Part shown: positions 51,301-61,436 of the stretch, piece by piece | Numbering within the stretch: the first letter of the stretch is position 1 | Layout: each line of letters begins with the position of its first letter | Position numbers and translations under genes: made by a program | DNA from: Phallusia mammillata | Lineage: Eukaryota | Assembly: GCA_965637545.1 (NCBI GenBank) | Contig: OZ281497.1 | Location: forward strand, 15,686,001 to 15,750,000 | DNA length: 64,000 nt | Direction: 5' to 3' | Notes under the pieces: generated by a model | What the model saw: only the letters and a program-made list of their open reading frames with translations | Told to the model about the DNA's origin: nothing | Database searches by the model: none

Positions 51301-53950
51301 TGTAACAGCGACTCCGTTATGATAAAGTTCAGCAAAAACTAGAAGGGTGGCTTAGCACATATTGCCCTTGCATATACACTATAACCTATTTTAAAACATA
51401 AATATATTTCCTATGCTTATTTTGTATTGGGTCCCATATTAGCCATCGTCTTTTATAACTTTAGTCGTTTCTGCAGGCAAAAACTCATGGGTCCCCACAC
51501 ATGCAAAGTTGAAAATAATGCAAGTATGTCTTATTTAACGTTTTAAAAAACTGACCCATTTTAAGGGGCTAGTAGGGCAACTAATTGGGTTCGACACACA
51601 AACTAAAAAATATATAAAAACCACAATGACTCAATCAATAGTACTGCAAAATTTCAGCCCAATCCACCAATGTTCACAATTTCGACCACTAGAGGTGTTT
51701 TGAGCAAAAACCGTTACTGTTTCTGACGTCATAGGGCTGTTAACAAGCCCCTAACTGCCATGGCGCAAAAATGACCACCAAGCAACCCACCAACGAGCAA
51801 CATACAACTGGTTGCCCTTGTAACACTATTGCTCCAAAGAAATCTTTCGTTTGTGGTGCCTAGTAACATACAAATACGTTTTACACTTTAGGGGCTTGTG
51901 GGGTAAATGTTAGGACTACAGGGTTGAACACAACAATCGACGCCTATAAATGGCATACTATACAAGAAATCCAAATTTCAGCCAATTCTGACACTGTTTA
52001 AAAACTCACCCATTTTAGGGGGCTAGCGGGGTAAATACTGGGGTTATCAACAAAAACAAAGTGGGATGCACATCTACATGAATATATCTACCATCTGTGT
52101 AAATTTCAGCCAAATCCATCTAACATTTGATGGAAAAACGAGTCGGACAAACTTTGGGTAAAAACACCCATTTTAGGGGGCGAGCGGGGTAAATACTGGG
52201 GTTATCAACAAAAACAAAGTGGGATGCACATCTACATAACTATATCTACCATCTGTGTAAATTTCAGCCAAATCCATCAAACATTTGATGAAAAAACCAG
52301 TCGGACAAACTTCCGGGGAAAATACCCATTTTAGGGGGCTAGCGGGGTAAATACTGGGGTTATCAACAAAAACAAAGTGGGATGCACATCTACATAACTA
52401 TATCTACCATCTGTGTAAATTTCAGCCAAATCCATCAAACATTTGATGGAAAACCGAGTCGGACAAACTTTGGGAAGAAAAAAAAAAAAAAAAAAAAAAA
52501 ACAATTCGTGTAAAATCAATATGTGTCCCCTTCAGGGAAGGGAACCCATAATAACTACGAATCGCACCGTAAAGTTCTGTTGTTGTGTGGTTAAAGCCAA
52601 CTGAACCGGTTATCTGGTGGGGATTATCTTTTTTATTGTTTGTGTACCGAGTGAAGTCACGTCTTTTCATAGCTAAGACTCAAGTCAAGTCTTTGAAAAT
52701 AGTGACTTACATGACTTATACTGCAATAAATGTTACCATTGACATTGCTAATCCTTACCAAGCAATGGACACAACTGTGGCACAAAAATAGAAACATCGC
52801 AAAGAGATCTCGCTAAAATTCGCGCATGTACCGACCTAACAATCATTAAACTTGTTGCATCGAATCATTATGGGCCCCCTAGACTCTCATGGGCCCCGGT
52901 GCGGCGCACCGGCTGCACCCCCCTCTTGTGGGGCCTGTCTGTAACCTATAGTCTTCTCACTTTCTATGCAACCCTTGCCTTAATAAAGGGTAACAGTGTG
53001 ACGTAAAGCACCAATAAAGCGATCTGGCAGCATGTGTGCTAGTTGAAAAGTGTGTGAATGCACCATACCCAGAAAGTTAGGAAGCATGATGTCATGTTCT
53101 GCACTGTGATTGGTACTTTGGTTTTGAAAGAGTAATTTTTCTACTCTCAGCTAGAAATAGTTGAAAATACTGAACTGTCACCACAGATGACAGTCATATC
53201 AACTTTGTTTTAGCTGGGAAAGTGTTAATGAGCAACAGCGGGCACTGTGTACATTTTAAACTAGTTCATCACATATTCCGGTTAATCACATCAAACATCC
53301 TGGAAAATTAATGATGTGATTAACCGAAGTCGTCTGTAATACAAAATTGAGTAACAAATATATTTGTTTGTACACTTACCAGCAGCTTCTGAATCTACAT
53401 TCGAAATTAGTGGATTGACAAAATTTTGGGTTGTTGAGTTTTGTCTGGGTTGTTGAGGGTTTAAATGTGGAGTACCATATGGCACATATTGCTGTTGCAT
53501 GTTGTTGTAGGGCTGTGGAGGTGGATTTCTCCAATTTTGGCTTCTGTCAGCTGCACTTTCGGAAGGCTGAGCTGTGCTCCATGCCCTTTGAGGTGGATTA
53601 CTTTGTGGCATCATGCTCATACTGTTTCCTGAAATACTAGAATACGGCGTGGGGTCAGATGTTTGAATGTATCCACCTTGTTGGGATGGTGTATAGAATA
53701 TGTTAGAAACATTTCCTTCCACTGGTGCTTGTTGATGCTGGTAAGGCATCGAATCACGCATTGATGACAAATTAAAGTCTGAACCAACACTGTTGTTTGA
53801 AGGTTGGCTATGCCAGCTGTGCTGACTTGAAGCAGGAACGCCATAACTTTGTGAGGGGTGGTTTACTGGTGACTGTGAACTTGGCTTTGCAACAGAACTT
53901 GGATCCCATACTCCAATTTCTATATGGGAGTTTTCAGATCGATTTGACAT
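45398..53950 (-). CDS. PAIP1: Poly(A)-binding protein-interacting protein 1-like with long N-terminal extension, ~835 aa, ~11 coding exons
   Basis: Exons 53950-53380, 50017-49904, 49659-49558, 49485-49400, 49101-48475, 48170-48125, 48055-47904, 47841-47675, 47172-46998, 46262-45987, 45589-45398 are phase-compatible. PAM2 motif SNLSATAAEFVP; MIF4G-like region PNFRYLGAQLC...FRSILL...FVSELFL...DENIQCVVRVLK...LRADNWGRV; acidic C-tail. The N-terminal exons are less certain than the MIF4G part. Confidence 0.86.
47365..47579. mobile_element. hAT-type MITE in a PAIP1 intron
   Basis: TIRs CAGTAGTTCTCAAACT / AGTTTGAGAACCACTG; perfect TSD ACATAAAA. Confidence 0.9.
50467..51025. mobile_element. hAT-like MITE nested in 50200-52937
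   Basis: TIRs CAGGAGTGGGGAACC / GGTTTCCCACTCCTG; no direct TSD recognisable. Confidence 0.6.
51103..51244. mobile_element. Short hAT-type MITE nested in 50200-52937
   Basis: TIRs CAGGGGTCACCAAACT / AGTTTGTTGGCCACTG; perfect TSD GCTTAAAC. Confidence 0.88.
51338..52552 (+). mobile_element. Helentron-like non-autonomous element (HINE/DINE-1 architecture), copy 1
   Basis: 5' end ACTAGAAGGG...CACATATTG...CCCTT; matching 3' subterminal inverted repeat CAATATGTG followed by a stem-loop GTCCCCTTC-AGG-GAAGGG(A/G)AC and CCATAATAA; internal tandem units; no TSD seen. Confidence 0.72.
52008..52481 (+). repeat. Three 158-bp tandem units inside Helentron-like copy 1
   Basis: ACCCATTTTAGGGGG recurs at 52008, 52166 and 52324; two more degenerate units lie upstream. 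Confidence 0.92.
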
Positions 53951-54703
53951 AATGCAGCAAAAATTGTCAATAGATTGCCTGATTTTTTTGTAATAATAAT
54001 AGTGTTTACAAACTAAAAAAAACACAAAAATTATGATTTTTTGGAAACATGCAAAGGTATTTATTGAAACTTTGAAATGTCTAAACCCAGGCACAATACA
54101 AAAAGCTGTGTGGGCATTTTTTTTTAAAGTTTAAACAAAAAATCAGATATGTCATATGTGTTCTGTTTATCGAAAATCACAACTGAGCTGTAAGTAAGAA
54201 CAACTGAACAAGAACCTTTAGCTGATGTCCTACGAACAATTGCAAATTTAGTACAAGCTGTGGGAATGAAAATGTCCCACCACTTCATAAAAAAACAGCA
54301 TAATAACAAAAACACGTTGGCGCATTTTGTCGTTATATTCCATGCCATAATTTCTATGCTTTTATTTACGATGTCTATGTCCCGAAATAATGCGTGGATC
54401 AGTCACGCGTGACACAACAACAACATTGACTGGATTCAAAGTCAACAGTCAACACCGCGGTCCGCTGGCCATAAAGAGTGAAAGGAACAAGTCTGCTTGA
54501 AGTGTTTTGCAGGTATCACTCCTTCGTTTTACATCATTTACATTAACTTGACACTGCATTGTTTTGTCATAAAGTAACGACCGTTTTTACCAGTGTAAAA
54601 TCAAATAACAAGTTTTTAGGTGGGCAGGTGGCCTCACAGAAACAAGTTTTCTGGGAAAAACATGTTTTTTTTCCTTGCTCAACAAACTATTTTTGCAGGA
54701 AAG
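53951..54703. promoter_or_regulatory. Divergent promoter/5' UTR region of PAIP1 and the Rab-kinase gene
   Basis: ATGs at 53950 (-) and 54704 (+) are 753 bp apart. Perfect 12-bp palindrome GTCACGCGTGAC at 54402-54413; probable 5' UTR intron 54513-54698 on the + strand. Confidence 0.7.
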
Positions 54704-57700
54704 ATGCCTTTGCCGGACTTTCGTATTTTATTGATTGGGGATTCCAGTGTTGGAAAGCGAGAAATCCTAATAGCATTTGAAGGTCGCAAATATACAACAC
54801 CACTTGCAGGTAACATCCTATCTAATGCTGCATTACAATAAGTAAGCACAACATACACCTTAAATTTCCCAACGATTTCATTTAAAACTGGCCGCACTGA
54901 TTGTCGGTAATGCAAGTTAATGATTATGTTTATGATGCTTCACAATGTTTTACTCTAAAATACACAATCTATAAATAGTATGTACTATTTAAGCTATACA
55001 ATTCTGATAAAAAATATGCCATGCTTCATGCAAACAGACTTAGTTCCAGTCACTTCCTGATTTTTTGCAATCCACCCCTAAAACAGTATATAGTTGTAGA
55101 TTGTGTATTGTGTAGAAAGTTTGAAAAAATTAAGTAGATTGTTGGAATAAATAGTGTTTACATGCAGCTTGGCCATTATATACTACATTGCTAGCTCAAT
55201 TTTTTAATTTGCCAGTTATGGAATGTTAGGCATTGATTTCATAGTTTAATTATCAGAAACAATCATTGCAAAAAGTGCATATTTGACCAACAAAAACTTT
55301 AATGCATTACAAAATATAGCAATGTGTTTCATTATTACAATGTGGTAGTGATAATACATTACAAAATATGTCACAACATGGTATATGTATAAATATTCGT
55401 CAATTTGATGTTGAATGATGTTGCACAGGAACATTAACTGGAAGTTTTTGTTTTGTTCTGAGGTTTTGAACTTAAAACAGAAGAGTTTGATGTCAATGGA
55501 AACATGGTCAAAGTTGAATTATGGTGAGAATTGTTATGTTTTTGATATTTTGTTACATTCAATCAATGCTTATTATGGGTCCCCTTCCCTGAAGGGGACA
55601 CATATTGATTTTACTCGAATTGTTTGTTTGTTTTTTCTTTTTTTTTCTTCCTTTTTTTTTTCTTCCCAAAGTTTGTCCGACTCGTTTTTCTATCAAATGT
55701 TTGATGGAATTGGCTGAAATTTACACAGATGGTAGATATAGTTATGTAGATGTGCATCCCACTTTGTTTTTGTTGATAACCCCAGTATTTACCCCGCTAG
55801 CCGCCTAAAATGGGTATTTTTCCCGGAAGTTTGTCCGACTCATTTTTCCATCAAATGTGTTTGGCTGAAATTTACACAGATGGTAGATATAGTTATGTAG
55901 ATGTGCATCCCACTTTGGTTTTGTTGATAACCCCAGTATTTACCCCGCTCGCCCCCTAAAATGGGTGTTTTTACCCAAAGTTTGTCCGACTCGTTTTTCC
56001 ATCAAATGTTTGATGGATTTGGCTGAAATTTACACAGATGGTAGATATATTCATGTAGATGTGCATCCCACTTTGTTTTTGTTGATAACCCCAGTATTTA
56101 CCCCGCTAGCCCCCTAAAATGGGTGAGTTTTTAAACAGTGTCAGAATTGACTGAAATTTGGATTTCTTGTATAGTATGCCATTTATAGGTGTCGATTGTT
56201 GTGTTCAACCCTGTAGTCCTACATTTACCCCACAAGCCCCTAAAGTGTAAAACGTATTTGTATGTTACTGGGCACCACAGACGAAAGATTTCTTTGGAGC
56301 AATAGTGTTACAAGGGCAACCAGTTGTATGTTGCTCGTTGGTGGGTTGCTTGGTGGTTGTTTTTGCGCCATGGCAGTTAGGGGGTTGTTAACAGCCCTAT
56401 GACGTCAGAAACAGTAACGGTTGTTGCTCAAAACACCTCTAGTGGTCGAAATTTTAAACATTGGCGGATTGGGCTGAAATTTTGCAGTACTATTGATTGA
56501 GTCATTGTGGTTTTTATATATTTTTTAGTTTGTGTGTCGAACCGAATTAGTTGCCCTACTAGCCCCCTAAAATGGGTCAGTTTTTTAAAACATTAAATAG
56601 GACATACTTCAAACAATATCTGGGGTGAATCTAATTTTGTAGTTTGTATTCTACATAGTATTATTATTTAAGCCCAGTGCCAGTCACTGTGTTTTACCTT
56701 ACAACACCAGACTTTCTCATGGTTATCTCTTGAATTGCATTATTTTCAACTTTGCATGTGTGGGGACCCATGAGTTTTTGCCTGCAGAAACGACTAAAGT
56801 TATAAAAGACGATGGCTAATATGGGACCCAATACAAAATAAGCATAGGAAATATATTTATGTTTTAAAATAGGTTATAGTGTATATGCAAGGGCAATATG
56901 TGCTAAGCCACCCTTCTAGTTTTAATAAAATTTTACATTACAAAAACAATCATACTATATTGTCTTCAACGTTTGTTTTTACAGCGATAGTCAAGGATCA
57001 GATAGTTCTGCAAAACTTGATTCTACATTTTATGAGAAAACCGTTCAGGTAAAAATTTTGATTTGCCAATTACCTTTCAAACCTCTTTACTTTTAGTTGA
57101 CTAAGGCAAAAAATGTACTATACATTGTTTAAACAAGTTTATTGGCATAAAGTGCCTTTTGTTTTGCAGGGTGTATTTCTTATTTACGATGATGCAAAAT
57201 CTTTTGAAAATTTGCCTCGTTGGCTACATAATGTAAACCAGGTAAAAAAAGTTATTTTTTTAAGGTTATTACTATGTCAAACTTCTCTGCATATTGTAGA
57301 ACATTTCAAGTGCCATGAAAACAGTACTTTGCTATAAAAGACAACAAAAAAAGTGTGATGTCCTTGATAAACAGGGAAAACAGGTACATTATCATCATTT
57401 TTGTACAGTAGTATTTAAATCATTTCCTATTTTGGGACAATGCAAAAATTGTATAGTTTGCTTCGAAAAATCAATGTGAATTTCAAGTGTTTCATCAAAA
57501 GGAGAGGACTATGATTTCAAAGGTTGGTAGGCCCAGTTTACATAAACATACATGTCTGCCTTGTGTTGGCATCAACAAAGTACTAGTTTCATTTTTAGAT
57601 TGTTTACAACATGGTTAAGGAATCCCTCTCAAAACAGCTTACAAAAAACGATGTAAGTTTTTATGGTAAATTTACGGTTAAATCAATAAATGCTTCTTCT

Positions 57701-60256
57701 TTGTTAAGAAAGATGAAGTAAAAAAGTCAGTTCCTGTTGTGAAAATGAAACCTCCACAAAAGCCAAGACAAAGAAAAAAAATGGTCAGTTTTTTAAATGT
57801 TTTAAAATAAAAACCCTGACAATTACTGATACAAGATTTGGTAAAAATGGGTTTTGCACTTAGTTACTCTAGGTTTGCTTTATTCTGGGACAGCAACATA
57901 CATTTAAAACCCACAAATCTGCATACATTTAAAACCCACAAATAAAAATGTATTACTTGGAACTTTATGCCCAAAGTAACCCACATGTTTCTGTCTGCCA
58001 AAGAAACTAGTTGTAAAACATGCAATGATCCCAATCTCATGCAATATAGAAGACCATATATGGAAAAAAATTTACATTTCGCTTTTTTGTTTAACCATCA
58101 CCAACCCAGATCACAGAATCTTCAATTGAACAAATCACTACTAGTAAGTTGCAAGAAGCTTCCAGCAAAGATAATCCAAACATTAAAGGTTTGAAACAAG
58201 CCAATGAACCACACAATGTGAAAGATCTAAAATTGGCAAAACAGGTTAGAAAATGGGTCTTTTTAAAAAAAAATATTTTTATTATTTTTTTATGATTAGG
58301 CATTGTTTGTGTTTTAGATAGATCAAACTTCTGATGCTGCATTTACAATATTTGTGGAATGTTGCAAAGACCACTCTCTGGAACTGCAGGAGGTAGACCA
58401 TGAATTTAAACAAATGTAGATTACAATTTATCAAAATTTTGGAAAATATTTTTAGATGGTGTCAATTAATTGACATTTCCAACTTGTGGAGTGTAACATA
58501 ATTTCTTATCTTTGAATTTCCACCCAAATAGAAAAGCAGTCAATGTCATCCATATTGTTGTTGTTTAGATTATAAAGCAGATGCAAAAATCATCAAGGAA
58601 ACAAAGTTGGTTTGAGGAACAGTGTAATGCAGCTCAGAGCAAGGCATTGCAGCAACTTGATGGAAGTTTGCATCAATTTAACATTGTATTGGCTACTAAA
58701 ATAAAAAGTAGTTTTGCTGAGAACATAAAGATAATGAAAGAAGTTTTCCAAGACCTATGTCGGCCCAAATTCAAGGTTTGAGTTTTAGGTGTACCAAGGT
58801 ATTTCACCTTTCAAAAACCATTGTTTTACAGGTAAACATAAACTTGTATAAACCAAATGAATTTTCTATGTGTAAGTCAAACTCATCTCTTGGAAAGGGT
58901 GGCTTTGGTGTCGTACACCTTGCATTTCATGAATCACTTGGATGGGTAGCTATTAAAACACAGAAGGGGGCAGATAAGGCCAGGTATGTGTTTTGTTTTT
59001 TATTTTCACAATGCTAAGCACATCAAAGCTAATTTCTTACATCATGTGGCCTACATTGTGACATATCAACAACCTGTGGCCCACCAAGCAAAGTTATCCG
59101 ACTCTTTTACCCCCTATCCAAAATTGTTTCTGTTACTTACAACAACCTCTATTTATAAAATCAAAAACATTTAAGAAAAAAATATTATTTGAAATGCTCC
59201 GCATAATCCTTGCTGATCATGGTAGCAGCCAGCGACTTTTGAAAGGTTGCCGGCCCACTACCACCATCAACTTATTGCTTAAGAGCAGAGAATTTAAAAC
59301 ATTGATAGATTAATACATTTTGTACTAAGTATAGGTTATCAGTCATCTCACATAAAACAATTCAGTATATCTTCAGAACACTATGTATGGGATGTATATG
59401 CGCCATTTGTTACCCAAAAATTATTATTTTTGTTTACAGCTTTCTGAACGAAAGTACAATTGCCCAGATGGCTCATCACCCCAATGTTGTAGAAATGTTT
59501 GGTATAATCAGCCATCTAGATGGCAGTTTCGACCTCGTCATGGAATATATGTCCGGTGGCTCTTTGGCACATCTAATATTTAACAGTGCTATCAAGCAAA
59601 TGAATTTACTCCACCTAAAGCTTCGGATGTTTTCTGATATTGCGTCAGGAATAGCCTTTCTGCACAATATTTTCGTTGACCGTCGGATTGCTCACAACGA
59701 TGTTAAACCCCACAACGTACTTTTGACGTCCGAGATCAACTGTAAAATATCCGACTTTGGAGGCGCCAATTTTGAAACGCGCACGGAGTTTGCACAGGAC
59801 GAGCCACGAAAATTAACCCCGTATACCAGGATTTTTGCTTCGCCAGAGCGACTTGCCAGTCTTGAGAATTTAACAAAAGCCTCCGACGTGCACAGTTTTG
59901 GTATGACTGGGTACTGCATCCTGGAAGAATCTTTGCCGAACAAAGATCGACAGGAGGGCGAATTTGCAGACCTGATCAAAAGCGGTCAACGACCAAGTTT
60001 TTCAGACTGTAGCAACATAACTGGCGAGAGTCTCGAGATTCTTGAATTCCTGCAGTTCGTTGTGTGTAAGTCGTGGCAACAGGATCCAAGTAAACGCCCG
60101 TCGATGTTGGACATACGAGATAATCTACTCGAGTTTCTTGCTAAGAAAGAGGTCACCGTATGCATGAAGCAAGCCCTTGATGCTGCAGTTGCCCTTAAGC
60201 TTCAGCACCGTCCGTTTGACAAGTCGTCTCTAATTCTTATGATGCCTCGCAAATGA
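54704..60256 (+). CDS. Rab-like (degenerate small GTPase) domain fused to a RIPK-like/TKL non-RD protein kinase, ~649 aa, 13 coding exons
   Basis: Exons 54704-54809, 55481-55523, 56985-57048, 57170-57241, 57300-57383, 57457-57522, 57599-57652, 57709-57783, 58110-58244, 58318-58392, 58569-58775, 58832-58983, 59440-60256 are all GT-AG and in phase (1950 nt). N-terminus: FRILLIGDSSVGK...FDVNGNMVKVELCDSQG...GVFLIYD...SFENLPRWL. C-terminus: LGKGGFGVV, VAIK, HHPNVV, HNDVKPHNVLL, KISDFG, ASPE, KASDVHSFG, WQQDPSKRP. AATAAA near 60442. Confidence 0.82.
55572..56920 (-). mobile_element. Helentron-like non-autonomous element, copy 2 (inverted relative to copy 1)
   Basis: Reverse complement of 51338-52552 with the same termini and the same three-unit array (151-158 bp units, ~55650-56124), plus ~135 bp (about 56611-56745) absent from copy 1. 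Confidence 0.75.
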
Positions 60257-61436
60257 ATTTGAAGCCTTTTTATGCAAGTTTTTTATTGAACAGTTTCGAT
60301 TTGAAAATCTATGCAACTTGTAAATTGATCGCACTCAGTGAATGGTGCAAAAAAATACGCTATTTCTGTGTTTTATTTCTGCACGCTTTGGGCAAATGAA
60401 ATTTCTTCTGAGTAATTGTTTGCAATTTTGGGATGCCTAAAAATAAATAAAAAAGGTTGTGACATCTTCAAACGCACTGATAGAGCAGCGGTTTCAGACG
60501 TTTCTCAGCTTATTTAGCAAATAGTATTGGTGTAGTGATGACAGCCGAAATTGGGTCAAATTAGTGGTTATTATTTGTGACACTTTTTGGGGGGATAACT
60601 TAGTTATGTGGGGTAGCGACATTGGAAAAAAACTGGAAGTTACTTTATGACCTGTCAATAAGCCCTTGCGTTGTTCGTATCGTTGTTTCGCTTTTGTTGA
60701 TTTCGGGGTTTTGTTGACGAGTAGAGTGTTGTTACCCTGATGATGGACGTCAAAACAACGATACAAACTTCGTATTTGCCAGAAGGGCATCTGTAAAATC
60801 GTAAATCACCCAGCCGTAGGCCTATACATACGTCACATCTCAGAAACATGATCTTGGACCATGATTTTCCCCATTACTGATAACCAAAATAGGTCAAGAC
60901 ATGTTACGTTTGCATTACTGACAGAATTGTCCGGACCTTTGGTATTTTTACCTTATTTATCTGGACCTTTCACAAAACTAATTGAGTAGCCTGGTTTAGA
61001 GCTTCCGCCAAAACAATTTCATGATTTGCCCTTAACACTCCTCTAACTCCTTAGGACTGCTCATAGACTAGAGTAGACACTATAGGTATGACTATTTCAC
61101 AAGTTGTATGAAAAGAAACACACGAACAAACGAACATAAAACAACCTTTATCAATTGGCGAAATACACATTAGCGGATTTTGACAGAATATTAACCCGCG
61201 CTTATTTACACCAAATATAGAATCTAGAATTTCGAGTTTAGAATAGAACTAAAATGAATTTAACGTTTGTAGGCGCGGTAAGTTATTTATATTACACATT
61301 TTTATTAGAAAACGGAAATGTTCAAAAGCAAAATTAAAACGAACGAGAATAGAAATCAATGAACAGGATTTGTGCTTGATGAACCGAAGTCATCACGCGT
61401 GATTATAGACTCAAGGTTAATGGGGTCGATCTAAAA

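What the first reader, a model, noticed from the sequence alone, without database searches (positions are those of the whole stretch)
54704..60256. Rab-like GTPase fold spliced in frame to a RIPK-like kinase: an unfamiliar GTPase-kinase architecture
Seen: 13 canonical exons join without a stop into Rab-like domain (~1-165 aa), then a ~160-aa linker (basic, S/T/Q-rich, predicted helical), then a TKL kinase. The Rab part has no C-terminal prenylation Cys motif. Established: the familiar animal GTPase+kinase proteins are Roco proteins (LRRK1/2, DAPK1), which carry a ROC-COR tandem, usually with LRR/ANK repeats; RIPKs normally carry death, CARD, ANK or RHIM modules. No COR, LRR, ANK or death domain is recognisable here. 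Inference: a lineage-specific signalling protein in which a small-GTPase fold regulates or localises a RIPK-type kinase, possibly in innate immunity or cell death. I cannot tell whether it has been described.
Basis: partly seen in the sequence, partly recalled or inferred. Interest (0 to 1): 0.85.

Follow-up and report, generated by a model that had tools for sequence, protein, structure and literature searches.

The report
Rab-like domain fused to RIPK-like kinase
A sea-squirt (Phallusia mammillata) gene really does make one spliced mRNA joining a degenerate Rab-type GTPase fold to an intact RIPK1-like kinase, one of many domain-swapped members of an ascidian-only kinase expansion; the pairing is undescribed, but the GTPase part looks switch-dead.

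Summary
Thirteen GT-AG coding exons (54704-60256, + strand), plus a 5' non-coding exon, give a 655-aa ORF. Transcript-type contigs from four studies show all 12 junctions. An independently deposited Phallusia mammillata protein (CAB3265596.1, auto-named "shkD-like") has the same length and differs at 4 residues.

- **Residues 1-169:** a full Ras/Rab fold, closest to Rab35/10/8, with no lipid-anchor Cys. The nucleotide motifs are damaged: P-loop Ser to Arg, switch-I Thr lost, catalytic Gln to Ser, G4 and G5 altered. It is probably a pseudo-GTPase, not a switch.
- **Residues 170-239:** a Lys-rich, likely disordered segment.
- **Residues 232-328:** two helices, one about 69 residues long.
- **Residues 345-620:** a kinase closest to RIPK1/2/3, with every catalytic residue kept (non-RD, HND).

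I found no COR, LRR, ANK, death, CARD or RHIM module, so it is not a Roco protein and not a canonical RIPK.

The kinase sits in a strongly supported clade. All 20 members whose source I looked up are ascidian. Members carry swapped partners: GBP, SPRY, SH3, NACHT, Kelch, TSP1, and in one Clavelina protein a C-terminal Rab-like domain.

No same-architecture ortholog was found in protein databases. One metagenome contig is a possible ortholog. The scan had already noted a different GTPase-kinase fusion (atlastin/GBP type) elsewhere in this genome.

Verdict: real and undescribed, a lineage-specific variant of moderate interest.

The parts
54470..54512 (+). 5' non-coding exon (start approximate), spliced to the acceptor just before the ATG
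   Evidence: In one search a 53-letter loose end of an X6 contig lies before 54691, and its shown letters match window 54476 onward. A GT donor follows 54512. The last 8 nt of this exon equal the end of the intron, so the junction is ambiguous by 8 nt.
54704..54809 (+). Coding exon 1 (aa 1-35): start codon, strand beta-1 and the P-loop GDSSVGKR
   Evidence: junction 54807>55461 seen in 4 runs. In one search this exon alone scores Ras 0.011 and Roc 0.046.
55463..55523 (+). Coding exon 2 (aa 36-55): switch I / interswitch strands
   Evidence: junctions seen in 4 runs.
56985..57048 (+). Coding exon 3 (aa 56-77): switch II, reading DSQGSD
57170..57241 (+). Coding exon 4 (aa 78-101): beta-4/alpha-3, the best-conserved Rab-like piece
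   Evidence: The only piece with a detectable counterpart in the metagenome contig (L003:2332-2406).
57300..57383 (+). Coding exon 5 (aa 102-129): beta-5 and the altered G4 region (YKRQQKKCD)
57384..57456 (+). Intron 5 (73 nt), retained in the X1 full-length contig; reading through it stops the protein at 160 aa
   Evidence: X1 record 1 is continuous over 57298-57652, while X6 and X17 are spliced here. One search gives the read-through product.
57457..57522 (+). Coding exon 6 (aa 130-151): altered G5 (HQK in place of SAK)
57523..57598 (+). Intron 6 (76 nt), retained in contigs of X1, X5 and X17; reading through it stops the protein at 182 aa
57599..57652 (+). Coding exon 7 (aa 152-169): C-terminal helix of the Rab fold
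57709..58244 (+). Coding exons 8 and 9 (57709-57783, 58110-58244; aa 170-239): Lys/Pro/Ser/Gln-rich basic segment, including KMKPPQKPRQRKKM
   Evidence: net charge +9, 21% Lys. No family or solved relative. No secondary structure in the low-confidence single-sequence model.
58318..58775 (+). Coding exons 10 and 11 (58318-58392, 58569-58775; aa 240-333): helical stalk
   Evidence: helices 232-254 and 260-328, pLDDT about 57-81; a/d hydrophobic pattern strongest over 300-334.
58832..58983 (+). Coding exon 12 (aa 334-383): kinase N-lobe, Gly loop G354-G359, beta-3 Lys375
59440..60256 (+). Coding exon 13 (aa 384-655 and stop): rest of the kinase (E388, H469-N-D471, K473, N476, D489-F-G, S518-P-E) and a 35-aa tail
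   Evidence: (Pkinase 1.4e-28), then.
60257..60451 (+). 3' UTR, covered by contigs at least to 60400; putative AATAAA at 60446-60451
   Evidence: contigs reach 60400, the end of the stretch laid. The sequence print shows the hexamer. The poly(A) site itself was not shown.

Best explanation
This is a genuine, expressed gene of Phallusia mammillata; no second copy lies in this window. The 655-aa protein has four parts.

1. **Rab-derived domain.** It keeps the whole small-GTPase fold but has lost the residues needed for a normal Mg-GTP cycle, and it has no lipid anchor. It most likely acts as a protein-binding or localising module (a pseudo-GTPase).
2. **Basic disordered tether.**
3. **Long alpha-helical stalk.** It may mediate self-association.
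4. **C-terminal RIPK1-like kinase.** It is catalytically competent and non-RD.

The kinase belongs to an ascidian-restricted expansion in which the same kinase has repeatedly been joined to different sensor or adaptor domains.

Proposed working: partners bound by the Rab-like module, plus helix-mediated clustering, bring kinase domains together. The kinases then auto-activate and signal, as RIPKs do through induced proximity.

Shown: gene structure, joined transcript, domain identities, motif states, clade membership. Inferred: absence of GTP switching, self-association, and the signalling or immune role.
For: - **Gene and transcript:**
- **Rab fold:** Pfam Ras 62.5 bits over the full profile; Rab35 7.8e-19; TM 0.83 to Rab clusters.
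- **Damaged G motifs:**. No CaaX or CC end.
- **Kinase affinity:** RIPK1 7e-27, well above the next family. Foldseek top hits are RIPK2/1/3 for a model with pLDDT 86.9.
- **Kinase competence:** it keeps every invariant or near-invariant catalytic residue of 80 relatives: K375, E388, H469, D471, K473, N476, D489-F-G, P519-E520, D533, R603.
- **Helical stalk:**
- **Clade:** 45 rows with 100/99 support. P0001 is sister to a metagenome kinase (100/98). All 20 members whose source I looked up are Clavelina, Ciona or Phallusia, and the next branch out is amphioxus.
- **Partner domains in the clade:** GBP in 3 members, SH3 in 3, SPRY in 3, Ras in 2, and NACHT, Kelch, TSP1, SH2 and TPR in 1 each.
- **Literature context:** canonical RIPK1 (kinase + RHIM + death domain) is reported absent from tunicates (PMC12119088).
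Against: - No biochemical data exist. The P-loop Lys18, Asp57 and Gly60 survive, and a KKCD motif could serve as G4, so nucleotide binding is not excluded.
- The helices have only moderate confidence and no detectable homologs. Dimerisation is a guess.
- Two of the four runs assembled forms retaining intron 5 and/or 6, which stop the protein inside the Rab fold. Full-length protein may therefore be a minor product in some samples.
- No confirmed same-architecture ortholog was found, so purifying selection on the fusion is not demonstrated.
Confidence: 0.6

Rival explanations
1. Working GTP switch, as the first reader proposed and as in Roco proteins. The Rab-like domain still binds guanine nucleotide, and its state controls the fused kinase or its localisation within the same molecule.
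For: The full GTPase fold is kept. P-loop Lys18, switch-II Asp57 and Gly60 are present. If the alignment to the Clavelina Rab-like domain is used, G4 reads KKCD, keeping Lys and the guanine-specifying Asp. The related Clavelina kinase-kinase-Rab protein P0078 has canonical G1, G4 and G5.
Against: The Mg-coordinating Ser/Thr of the P-loop is Arg19. The switch-I Thr aligns to Leu34. The catalytic Gln is Ser61. G5 SAK is HQK. G4 needs a 4-residue insertion to be rescued. No COR dimerisation device is present.
Confidence: 0.2
2. Young or weakly constrained chimera. Exon shuffling in a fast-evolving kinase family produced a fusion whose Rab part is decaying. Much of the RNA is unproductive (intron-retaining, probably degraded), so the fusion has little specific function.
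For: G motifs are degenerate. No relative of residues 1-340 was found among 5.8 billion proteins other than the protein itself. Introns 5/6 are retained in contigs of X1, X5 and X17, giving premature stops. Domain partners turn over quickly in the clade.
Against: - The ORF is intact over 13 exons and in two independent alleles, with no change in the Rab part.
- The full Ras profile is matched end to end at 62.5 bits.
- The gene is present in transcript assemblies of at least five studies.
- Fully spliced forms exist (X6, X17).
- A contig from another organism carries a Rab-like exon on the same strand upstream of the sister kinase. Its divergence is similar to the kinase's (39% against 44% identity).
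Confidence: 0.15
3. Truncated Roco protein: a LRRK/DAPK-type Roc-COR-kinase gene that has lost most of its COR and its repeats.
For: Pfam Roc is above its cut-off (36.3 against 27 bits). The domain order GTPase then kinase is that of LRRK. LRRK kinases are counted among RIP kinases (RIPK6/7; abstract of PMC9573974).
Against: - Ras scores far higher than Roc (62.5 against 36.3 bits).
- All 60 listed solved relatives of the N-terminus are true Rabs, none a Roc.
- None of the 60 listed solved matches of the kinase is an LRRK.
- The kinase nests inside the ascidian RIPK1-like clade.
- The 165-aa linker gives no COR hit even at E<=10 and is predicted as a disordered segment plus two helices.
Confidence: 0.03

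Closest known systems
RIPK1/RIPK2/RIPK3 (receptor-interacting protein kinases, TKL group)
   Same: The kinase domain is closest to these in sequence (RIPK1 7e-27, RIPK3 4e-20) and in fold. Like RIPK1 (HKD in the alignment) it is a non-RD kinase (HND). It pairs a kinase with a separate interaction module.
   Different: The kinase is C-terminal, not N-terminal. There is no RHIM, death, CARD or ankyrin module. The partner is a Rab-like fold plus a helical stalk. It lies in a clade in which every member looked up is ascidian.
Roco proteins (LRRK1/2, DAPK1, MFHAS1; Roc-COR tandem)
   Same: A Ras-superfamily GTPase fold and a TKL kinase share one polypeptide, with the GTPase N-terminal of the kinase. 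The Pfam Roc model also matches.
   Different: No COR, LRR or ANK. The GTPase is closer to bona fide Rabs than to Roc. Its G motifs are degenerate, whereas (from general knowledge, not tested here) Roc domains bind and hydrolyse GTP.
Rab35 / Rab10 / Rab8 / Sec4 (Rab group I); large multi-domain Rabs (Rab40 with SOCS box, Rab44-46 with EF-hands)
   Same: Best sequence and structure matches of residues 1-169. The multi-domain Rab clusters show that Rab folds do get fused to other modules in animals (rows 2 and 6).
   Different: - No C-terminal Cys prenylation motif.
- P-loop Ser to Arg, switch-I Thr lost, Gln to Ser, G4 and G5 altered.
- It is fused to a kinase.
- The switch-II Thr that LRRK2 phosphorylates in Rab8/10/35 (from general knowledge) aligns to Lys66 here.
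Clavelina lepadiformis XP_076818014.1 / CAK8679994.1 (P0078; kinase-kinase-Rab-like, 1211 aa)
   Same: An ascidian protein of the same kinase clade that also carries a Rab8/10-like domain. Both Rab-like domains read G-S-D in switch II where the Rabs aligned here (Rab35, Rab10) read G-Q-E.
   Different: The domain order is reversed and the kinase is duplicated. Its Rab-like domain keeps GxxxxGKS, NKCD and SAK. The two Rab-like domains are only 27% identical, and each is closer to true Rabs than to the other. Common origin is therefore open.
MLKL (four-helix bundle + brace helices + pseudokinase)
   Same: Helices lie directly N-terminal of a RIPK-related kinase fold. The ESM Atlas structure search ranks an MLKL cluster first (TM 0.62 by target, 328 residues aligned). 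There is a sub-threshold Pfam SesA hit at 238-287 (E 0.01).
   Different: No MLKL_N or other four-helix-bundle family match. No sequence match of the linker to any solved chain. The 50 Foldseek PDB matches shown include no MLKL and cover about the length of the kinase domain. The kinase is not a pseudokinase.

Membership tests
Ras superfamily / Rab family small GTPase | Small-GTPase fold (Pfam Ras above the gathering score over the whole profile) | tested here: met
   Ras 62.5 bits against a cut-off of 21.6, residues 7-159 on profile positions 1-159 of 162. TM 0.83 to Rab clusters.
Ras superfamily / Rab family small GTPase | Intact G1-G5 nucleotide-binding and hydrolysis motifs | tested here: not met
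   G1 is GDSSVGKR (Ser/Thr to Arg19). The G2 Thr aligns to Leu34. G3 is DSQG-S (Gln to Ser61). G4 is YKRQ, or KKCD after a 4-residue insertion. G5 is HQK.
Ras superfamily / Rab family small GTPase | C-terminal Cys prenylation motif (CC, CXC or CaaX) after a hypervariable tail | tested here: not met
   The domain is internal and the protein ends ...LILMMPRK. The regex search found none.
Roco (Roc-COR) proteins | Roc GTPase domain | tested here: inconclusive
   Pfam Roc 36.3 bits against a cut-off of 27, but Ras scores 62.5. All 60 listed solved relatives are Rabs.
Roco (Roc-COR) proteins | COR domain directly C-terminal of Roc | tested here: not met
   No COR hit in P0001 or in residues 160-350 at E<=10. 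The linker is 165 aa: a disordered segment plus two helices. No solved relative.
Roco (Roc-COR) proteins | LRR and/or ankyrin repeats (usual, not universal) | tested here: not met
   No such Pfam hits.
RIP kinases (RIPK1-3 type) | Kinase domain most similar to RIPK1-3 | tested here: met
   RIPK1 97.9 bits, against 77 bits for the next family. The Foldseek top 24 are RIPK2/1/3. NCBI names clade relatives 'RIPK1-like'.
RIP kinases (RIPK1-3 type) | N-terminal kinase followed by a RHIM, death, CARD or ankyrin module | tested here: not met
   The kinase is C-terminal. There are no Death, CARD or Ank Pfam hits and no RHIM core tetrad.
Active eukaryotic protein kinase | Gly loop, beta-3 Lys, alpha-C Glu, catalytic Asp, Asn, DFG and APE-type motif | tested here: met
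   G354-G359, K375, E388, D471, K473, N476, D489-F-G and S518-P-E are all present. They coincide with the invariant columns of 80 and of 45 relatives. Activity itself was not tested.
MLKL-like executioners | N-terminal four-helix bundle (MLKL_N or HeLo-type) and a pseudokinase | tested here: not met
   No MLKL_N hit, only SesA at E 0.01 below its cut-off. Only two helices are predicted. The catalytic residues are intact.

The most novel reading that the evidence does not exclude
The Rab-like module could be an integrated decoy. It would be a switch-dead mimic of Rab1/8/10/35-type GTPases, which from general knowledge are favourite targets of bacterial effectors. Wired through a clustering helix to a RIPK-like kinase, binding or modification of the mimic by a pathogen factor (or by a host Rab regulator) would trigger immune or death signalling.

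On this reading it is one sensor in an ascidian family that also couples GBP, SPRY and NACHT modules to the same kinase. That would be an animal counterpart of plant NLR integrated decoys, built on a kinase. A common origin with the Clavelina kinase-Rab protein (both read G-S-D in switch II) would make Rab-kinase coupling older than the split between phlebobranch and aplousobranch ascidians.
Probability: 0.12. Interest if true: 0.8.

Novelty: new variant of a known kind. Interest (0 to 1): 0.45.

Why it matters
It adds a third way, beside Roco proteins and canonical RIPKs, of coupling a GTPase fold to a RIPK-type kinase in a chordate, here without COR and probably without a nucleotide switch.

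It also exposes a kinase clade, ascidian wherever its members' sources were checked, that has repeatedly captured modules used for pathogen sensing in vertebrates (GBP, SPRY, NACHT). Tunicates are reported to lack canonical RIPK1 (PMC12119088), so this family is a candidate for what replaced death-domain/RHIM RIPK signalling in vertebrates' closest relatives.

The protein is small enough for direct tests of nucleotide binding, kinase activity and oligomerisation. Phallusia is an established experimental ascidian. The value is moderate, because the gene may be confined to a narrow lineage and its function is unknown.

Tried and rejected
- **Single-sequence AlphaFold of the whole protein** gave an unusable model (pLDDT 37). 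I replaced it with residues 230-655 plus an 80-row alignment.
- **Word-indexed searches** with residues 1-340 and 1-170 found only the protein itself or nothing. The Rab part is too divergent to share 5-residue words with true Rabs. A blank here says little about distant relatives or about proteins outside the length window.
- **The region-limited kinase search** added only Clavelina P0018 and a plant kinase.
- **MLKL-like bundle idea.** The leads were SesA at E 0.01 and the Atlas structure row. Neither the PDB sequence search, nor Pfam at E<=10, nor Foldseek backed it, so I dropped it.
- **Stalk homology.** Aligning the 130 residues upstream of the kinase in eight clade members showed no convincing shared stalk. 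Atlas matches of the linker were unrelated bacterial helical proteins with TM<=0.45.
- **Paralogs in the window.** tblastn of the model against the window found none.
- **More Rab-like exons in the metagenome contig.** Only the exon-4 equivalent was found. The same method on the window itself also detects only exon 4, and exon 1 weakly, so it cannot settle the contig's architecture.
- **Synteny between window and contig** gave one short, non-collinear ORF match of unknown nature. It is not usable.
- **The metagenome-wide scan** with a two-row kinase alignment returned only generic kinases of about 30% identity, because the patterns were too unspecific.
- **Literature searches**, including by accession, found no description.

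Full report
**What is in the sequence.** The window has no N and about 38% G+C. Between 54704 and 60256 on the + strand I rebuilt 13 coding exons. Every one is flanked by AG...GT with a pyrimidine-rich acceptor. Together they give a 1968-nt CDS and a 655-aa protein.

**Transcript evidence.** Twenty public runs of one organism hold the stretch. Two hold nearly all of it and are the genome. Eighteen hold 0.31-0.41 of the sampled words, about the exonic share.
- I laid contigs from four of those runs, each from a different study. All 12 junctions appear as GT..AG skips.
- A 2399-nt contig in X1 runs from 54691 to beyond 60400.
- X6 record 14 joins the 5' end to exon 9, X5 record 12 joins exons 6-12, and X17 record 7 joins exons 8/9-13.
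- The Rab part and the kinase part are therefore on one RNA.
- A loose end in X6, together with the sequence, shows a further 5' non-coding exon ending near 54512.

**Independent confirmation and organism.** An exhaustive HMMER search with exon 13 returned a 655-aa protein at 100% identity (P0001). It is CAB3265596.1 / UniProt A0A6F9DRK6, [quoted passage not shown]. It differs from my model at four residues, 270, 304, 316 and 374, which are allelic and match differences seen in the reads. The architecture is thus already in public databases, with Pfam Ras, Roc and kinase precomputed. The automatic name hides it.

**Domain identities.**
- *Pfam on P0001:* Ras 4.5e-17 over residues 7-159 (profile 1-159 of 162), Roc 7.4e-9, Pkinase 6e-34 over 350-609. 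There is no COR, LRR, Ank, Death or CARD, even at E<=10 on the linker alone.
- *N-terminus:* against all solved chains it is closest to Rab35 (7.8e-19), then Rab10, Sec4, Rab8A and Ypt1/Rab1. The ESM Atlas model of residues 1-170 superposes on Rab clusters at TM 0.83 over 164 residues.
- *Kinase:* it is closest to RIPK1 (7e-27, 97.9 bits). Next come a plant lectin receptor kinase (77 bits), RIPK3 (about 76 bits) and Src.
- *Kinase model:* an AlphaFold model of residues 230-655 built with an 80-row alignment has mean pLDDT 86.9. Its best Foldseek matches are RIPK2, RIPK1 and RIPK3.

**The GTPase part is probably not a switch.** In the HMMER alignment to Rab35:
- The P-loop is GDSSVGKR. Lys18 is kept, but the Mg-binding Ser/Thr is Arg19.
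- The switch-I Thr aligns to Leu34.
- Switch II is DSQGSD. Asp57 and Gly60 are kept, but the catalytic Gln is Ser61.
- NKxD aligns to YKRQ.
- SAK is lost.

The BLAST alignment to the Clavelina Rab-like domain instead places a 4-residue insertion and reads G4 as KKCD and G5 as HQK. Lys and the guanine-specifying Asp may therefore survive.

There is no C-terminal Cys motif. My reading, as an inference, is that the domain is hydrolysis-dead. It is probably also impaired in Mg-nucleotide binding. I put the odds of a pseudo-GTPase at roughly 70%.

**The kinase looks active.** Gly loop 354-359, K375, E388, H469-N-D471, K473, N476, D489-F-G and S518-P-E are all present. They coincide with the invariant or near-invariant columns of 80 relatives and of the 45-member clade. 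HND makes it a non-RD kinase, like RIPK1's HKD seen in the alignment.

**The linker.**
- Residues 170-239 are 21% Lys, net charge +9, with a KMKPPQKPRQRKKM cluster.
- The model predicts helices at 232-254 and 260-328. The second is about 69 residues long, with pLDDT rising to about 80 next to the kinase. The a/d hydrophobic pattern is best over 300-334.
- Nothing in PDB sequences, Pfam or the Atlas explains this region.
- Two weak pointers to MLKL/HeLo-type bundles were not backed by Foldseek.

**Family context.**
- In a maximum-likelihood tree of 80 kinase domains, P0001 lies in a 45-row clade with 100/99 support.
- All 20 members whose source I looked up are ascidian (Clavelina lepadiformis, Ciona intestinalis, Phallusia mammillata). 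The next branch out is an amphioxus "ANKK1".
- Full-length members carry very different partners. GBP, SH3 and SPRY each occur in 3 members and Ras in 2. NACHT, Kelch, TSP1, SH2 and TPR each occur in 1.
- The second Ras-bearing member is Clavelina P0078, with two kinase domains followed by a Rab8/10-like domain with canonical G1, G4 and G5. Like P0001 it reads G-S-D in switch II.
- The two Rab-like domains are only 27% identical, so one origin or two cannot be decided.
That fits the GBP-bearing clade members seen here.
- A published survey found no canonical RIPK1 (kinase + RHIM + death domain) in tunicates (PMC12119088).

**Orthologs.**
- Searches with residues 1-340, with 1-170 and with the kinase region found no protein of the same architecture. 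These searches have the length and word limits the operators describe.
- The sister of P0001 in the tree (100/98 support, 44-46% identity) is the last exon of a gene on eukaryote-like contigs from JGI and ENA metagenomes and one Logan run. The host is unknown.
- That contig has collinear equivalents of exons 12 and 13. About 8 kb upstream on the same strand it has a Ras-type beta-4/alpha-3 exon, found with two different Rab-like queries at E 0.006 and 7e-4.
- The same method on the window detects little more than exon 4, so the missing exons are not informative. I rate a conserved fusion in that organism at about even odds.

**Isoforms.** X1's full-length contig retains introns 5 and 6. X5 and X17 have contigs retaining intron 6. 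X6 and X17 also show both introns spliced. Retention stops the protein at 160 or 182 aa, inside the Rab fold. This could be unprocessed RNA or regulated intron detention. Contigs cannot give proportions.

**How it most likely works.** The protein has an intact non-RD RIPK-like kinase and a helical stalk beside it. Its Rab-shaped module has no anchor and a broken nucleotide site.
- The best-supported model is an induced-proximity signalling kinase.
- In this model the Rab-like domain binds partners such as Rab effectors, regulators or mimics. The stalk, and perhaps the basic tether, promote clustering, and the kinase auto-activates.
- The shown parts are the gene, the RNA, the domains, the motif states and the clade. 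The rest is inference.
- Rivals are a still-working GTP switch (0.2), a weakly constrained chimera (0.15) and a truncated Roco protein (0.03).

**Novelty.** I found no paper describing this protein or a Rab-RIPK architecture in animals. The library is incomplete.
- The protein fails the membership tests for a true Rab, for Roco, for canonical RIPK and for MLKL.
- It is best called a new variant of the multi-domain RIPK-like kinases.
- Interest is moderate, because domain shuffling in lineage-specific kinase expansions is common and the GTPase is degenerate.
- The family as a whole, and the decoy reading, deserve experimental follow-up.

Noticed in passing
window 55570-56923 (intron 2) and 51335-52554: A repeat element of about 1.35 kb with internal 157-158-nt tandem units sits in intron 2. 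It has an inverted copy 3-5 kb upstream, with arms 94-100% complementary. RNA contig depth over it is hundreds to thousands of times that of the gene, so it is a multi-copy, transcribed mobile-element-like repeat. I saw no joint that suggests inversion.
   Followed up: partly
window 57384-57456 and 57523-57598: The short introns 5 (73 nt) and 6 (76 nt) are retained in assembled transcripts of X1, X5 and X17 but spliced in X6 and X17. Retention gives stops after 160 or 182 aa. This may be detained-intron regulation or simply pre-mRNA.
   Followed up: partly
window 53291-54094, minus strand: A 267-aa open reading stretch rich in Gln, Pro and Ser runs on the opposite strand about 400 bp upstream of the 5' non-coding exon. 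It is probably the first large exon of a divergently transcribed neighbour sharing a bidirectional promoter. It has no Pfam match.
   Followed up: partly
P0078 / P0155 (Clavelina lepadiformis XP_076818014.1): An ascidian protein with two tandem RIPK-like kinase domains followed by a near-canonical Rab8/10-like domain whose catalytic Gln is Ser. It is a second, differently ordered Rab-kinase architecture in tunicates.
   Followed up: partly
45-row ascidian kinase clade (alignment A2): Members of the same kinase clade carry GBP, SPRY, SH3, NACHT, Kelch, TSP1, SH2 or TPR domains, or several kinase domains in tandem. This is a strikingly promiscuous family that seems undescribed as such.
   Followed up: partly
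L004:16187-16354 (minus strand) and window 52752-53003 (+): A short ORF upstream of the gene in the window has a 41%-identical counterpart (E 1.4e-7) downstream of the sister kinase on the metagenome contig, in the opposite relative orientation. It has no Pfam match. It could be a remnant of synteny or a shared repeat.
   Followed up: partly
P0002 (1069 aa): The second-best hit of the kinase search has 15 partial kinase-domain stretches (profile positions about 78-161 repeated). It is an odd array of kinase fragments of unknown origin.
   Followed up: no
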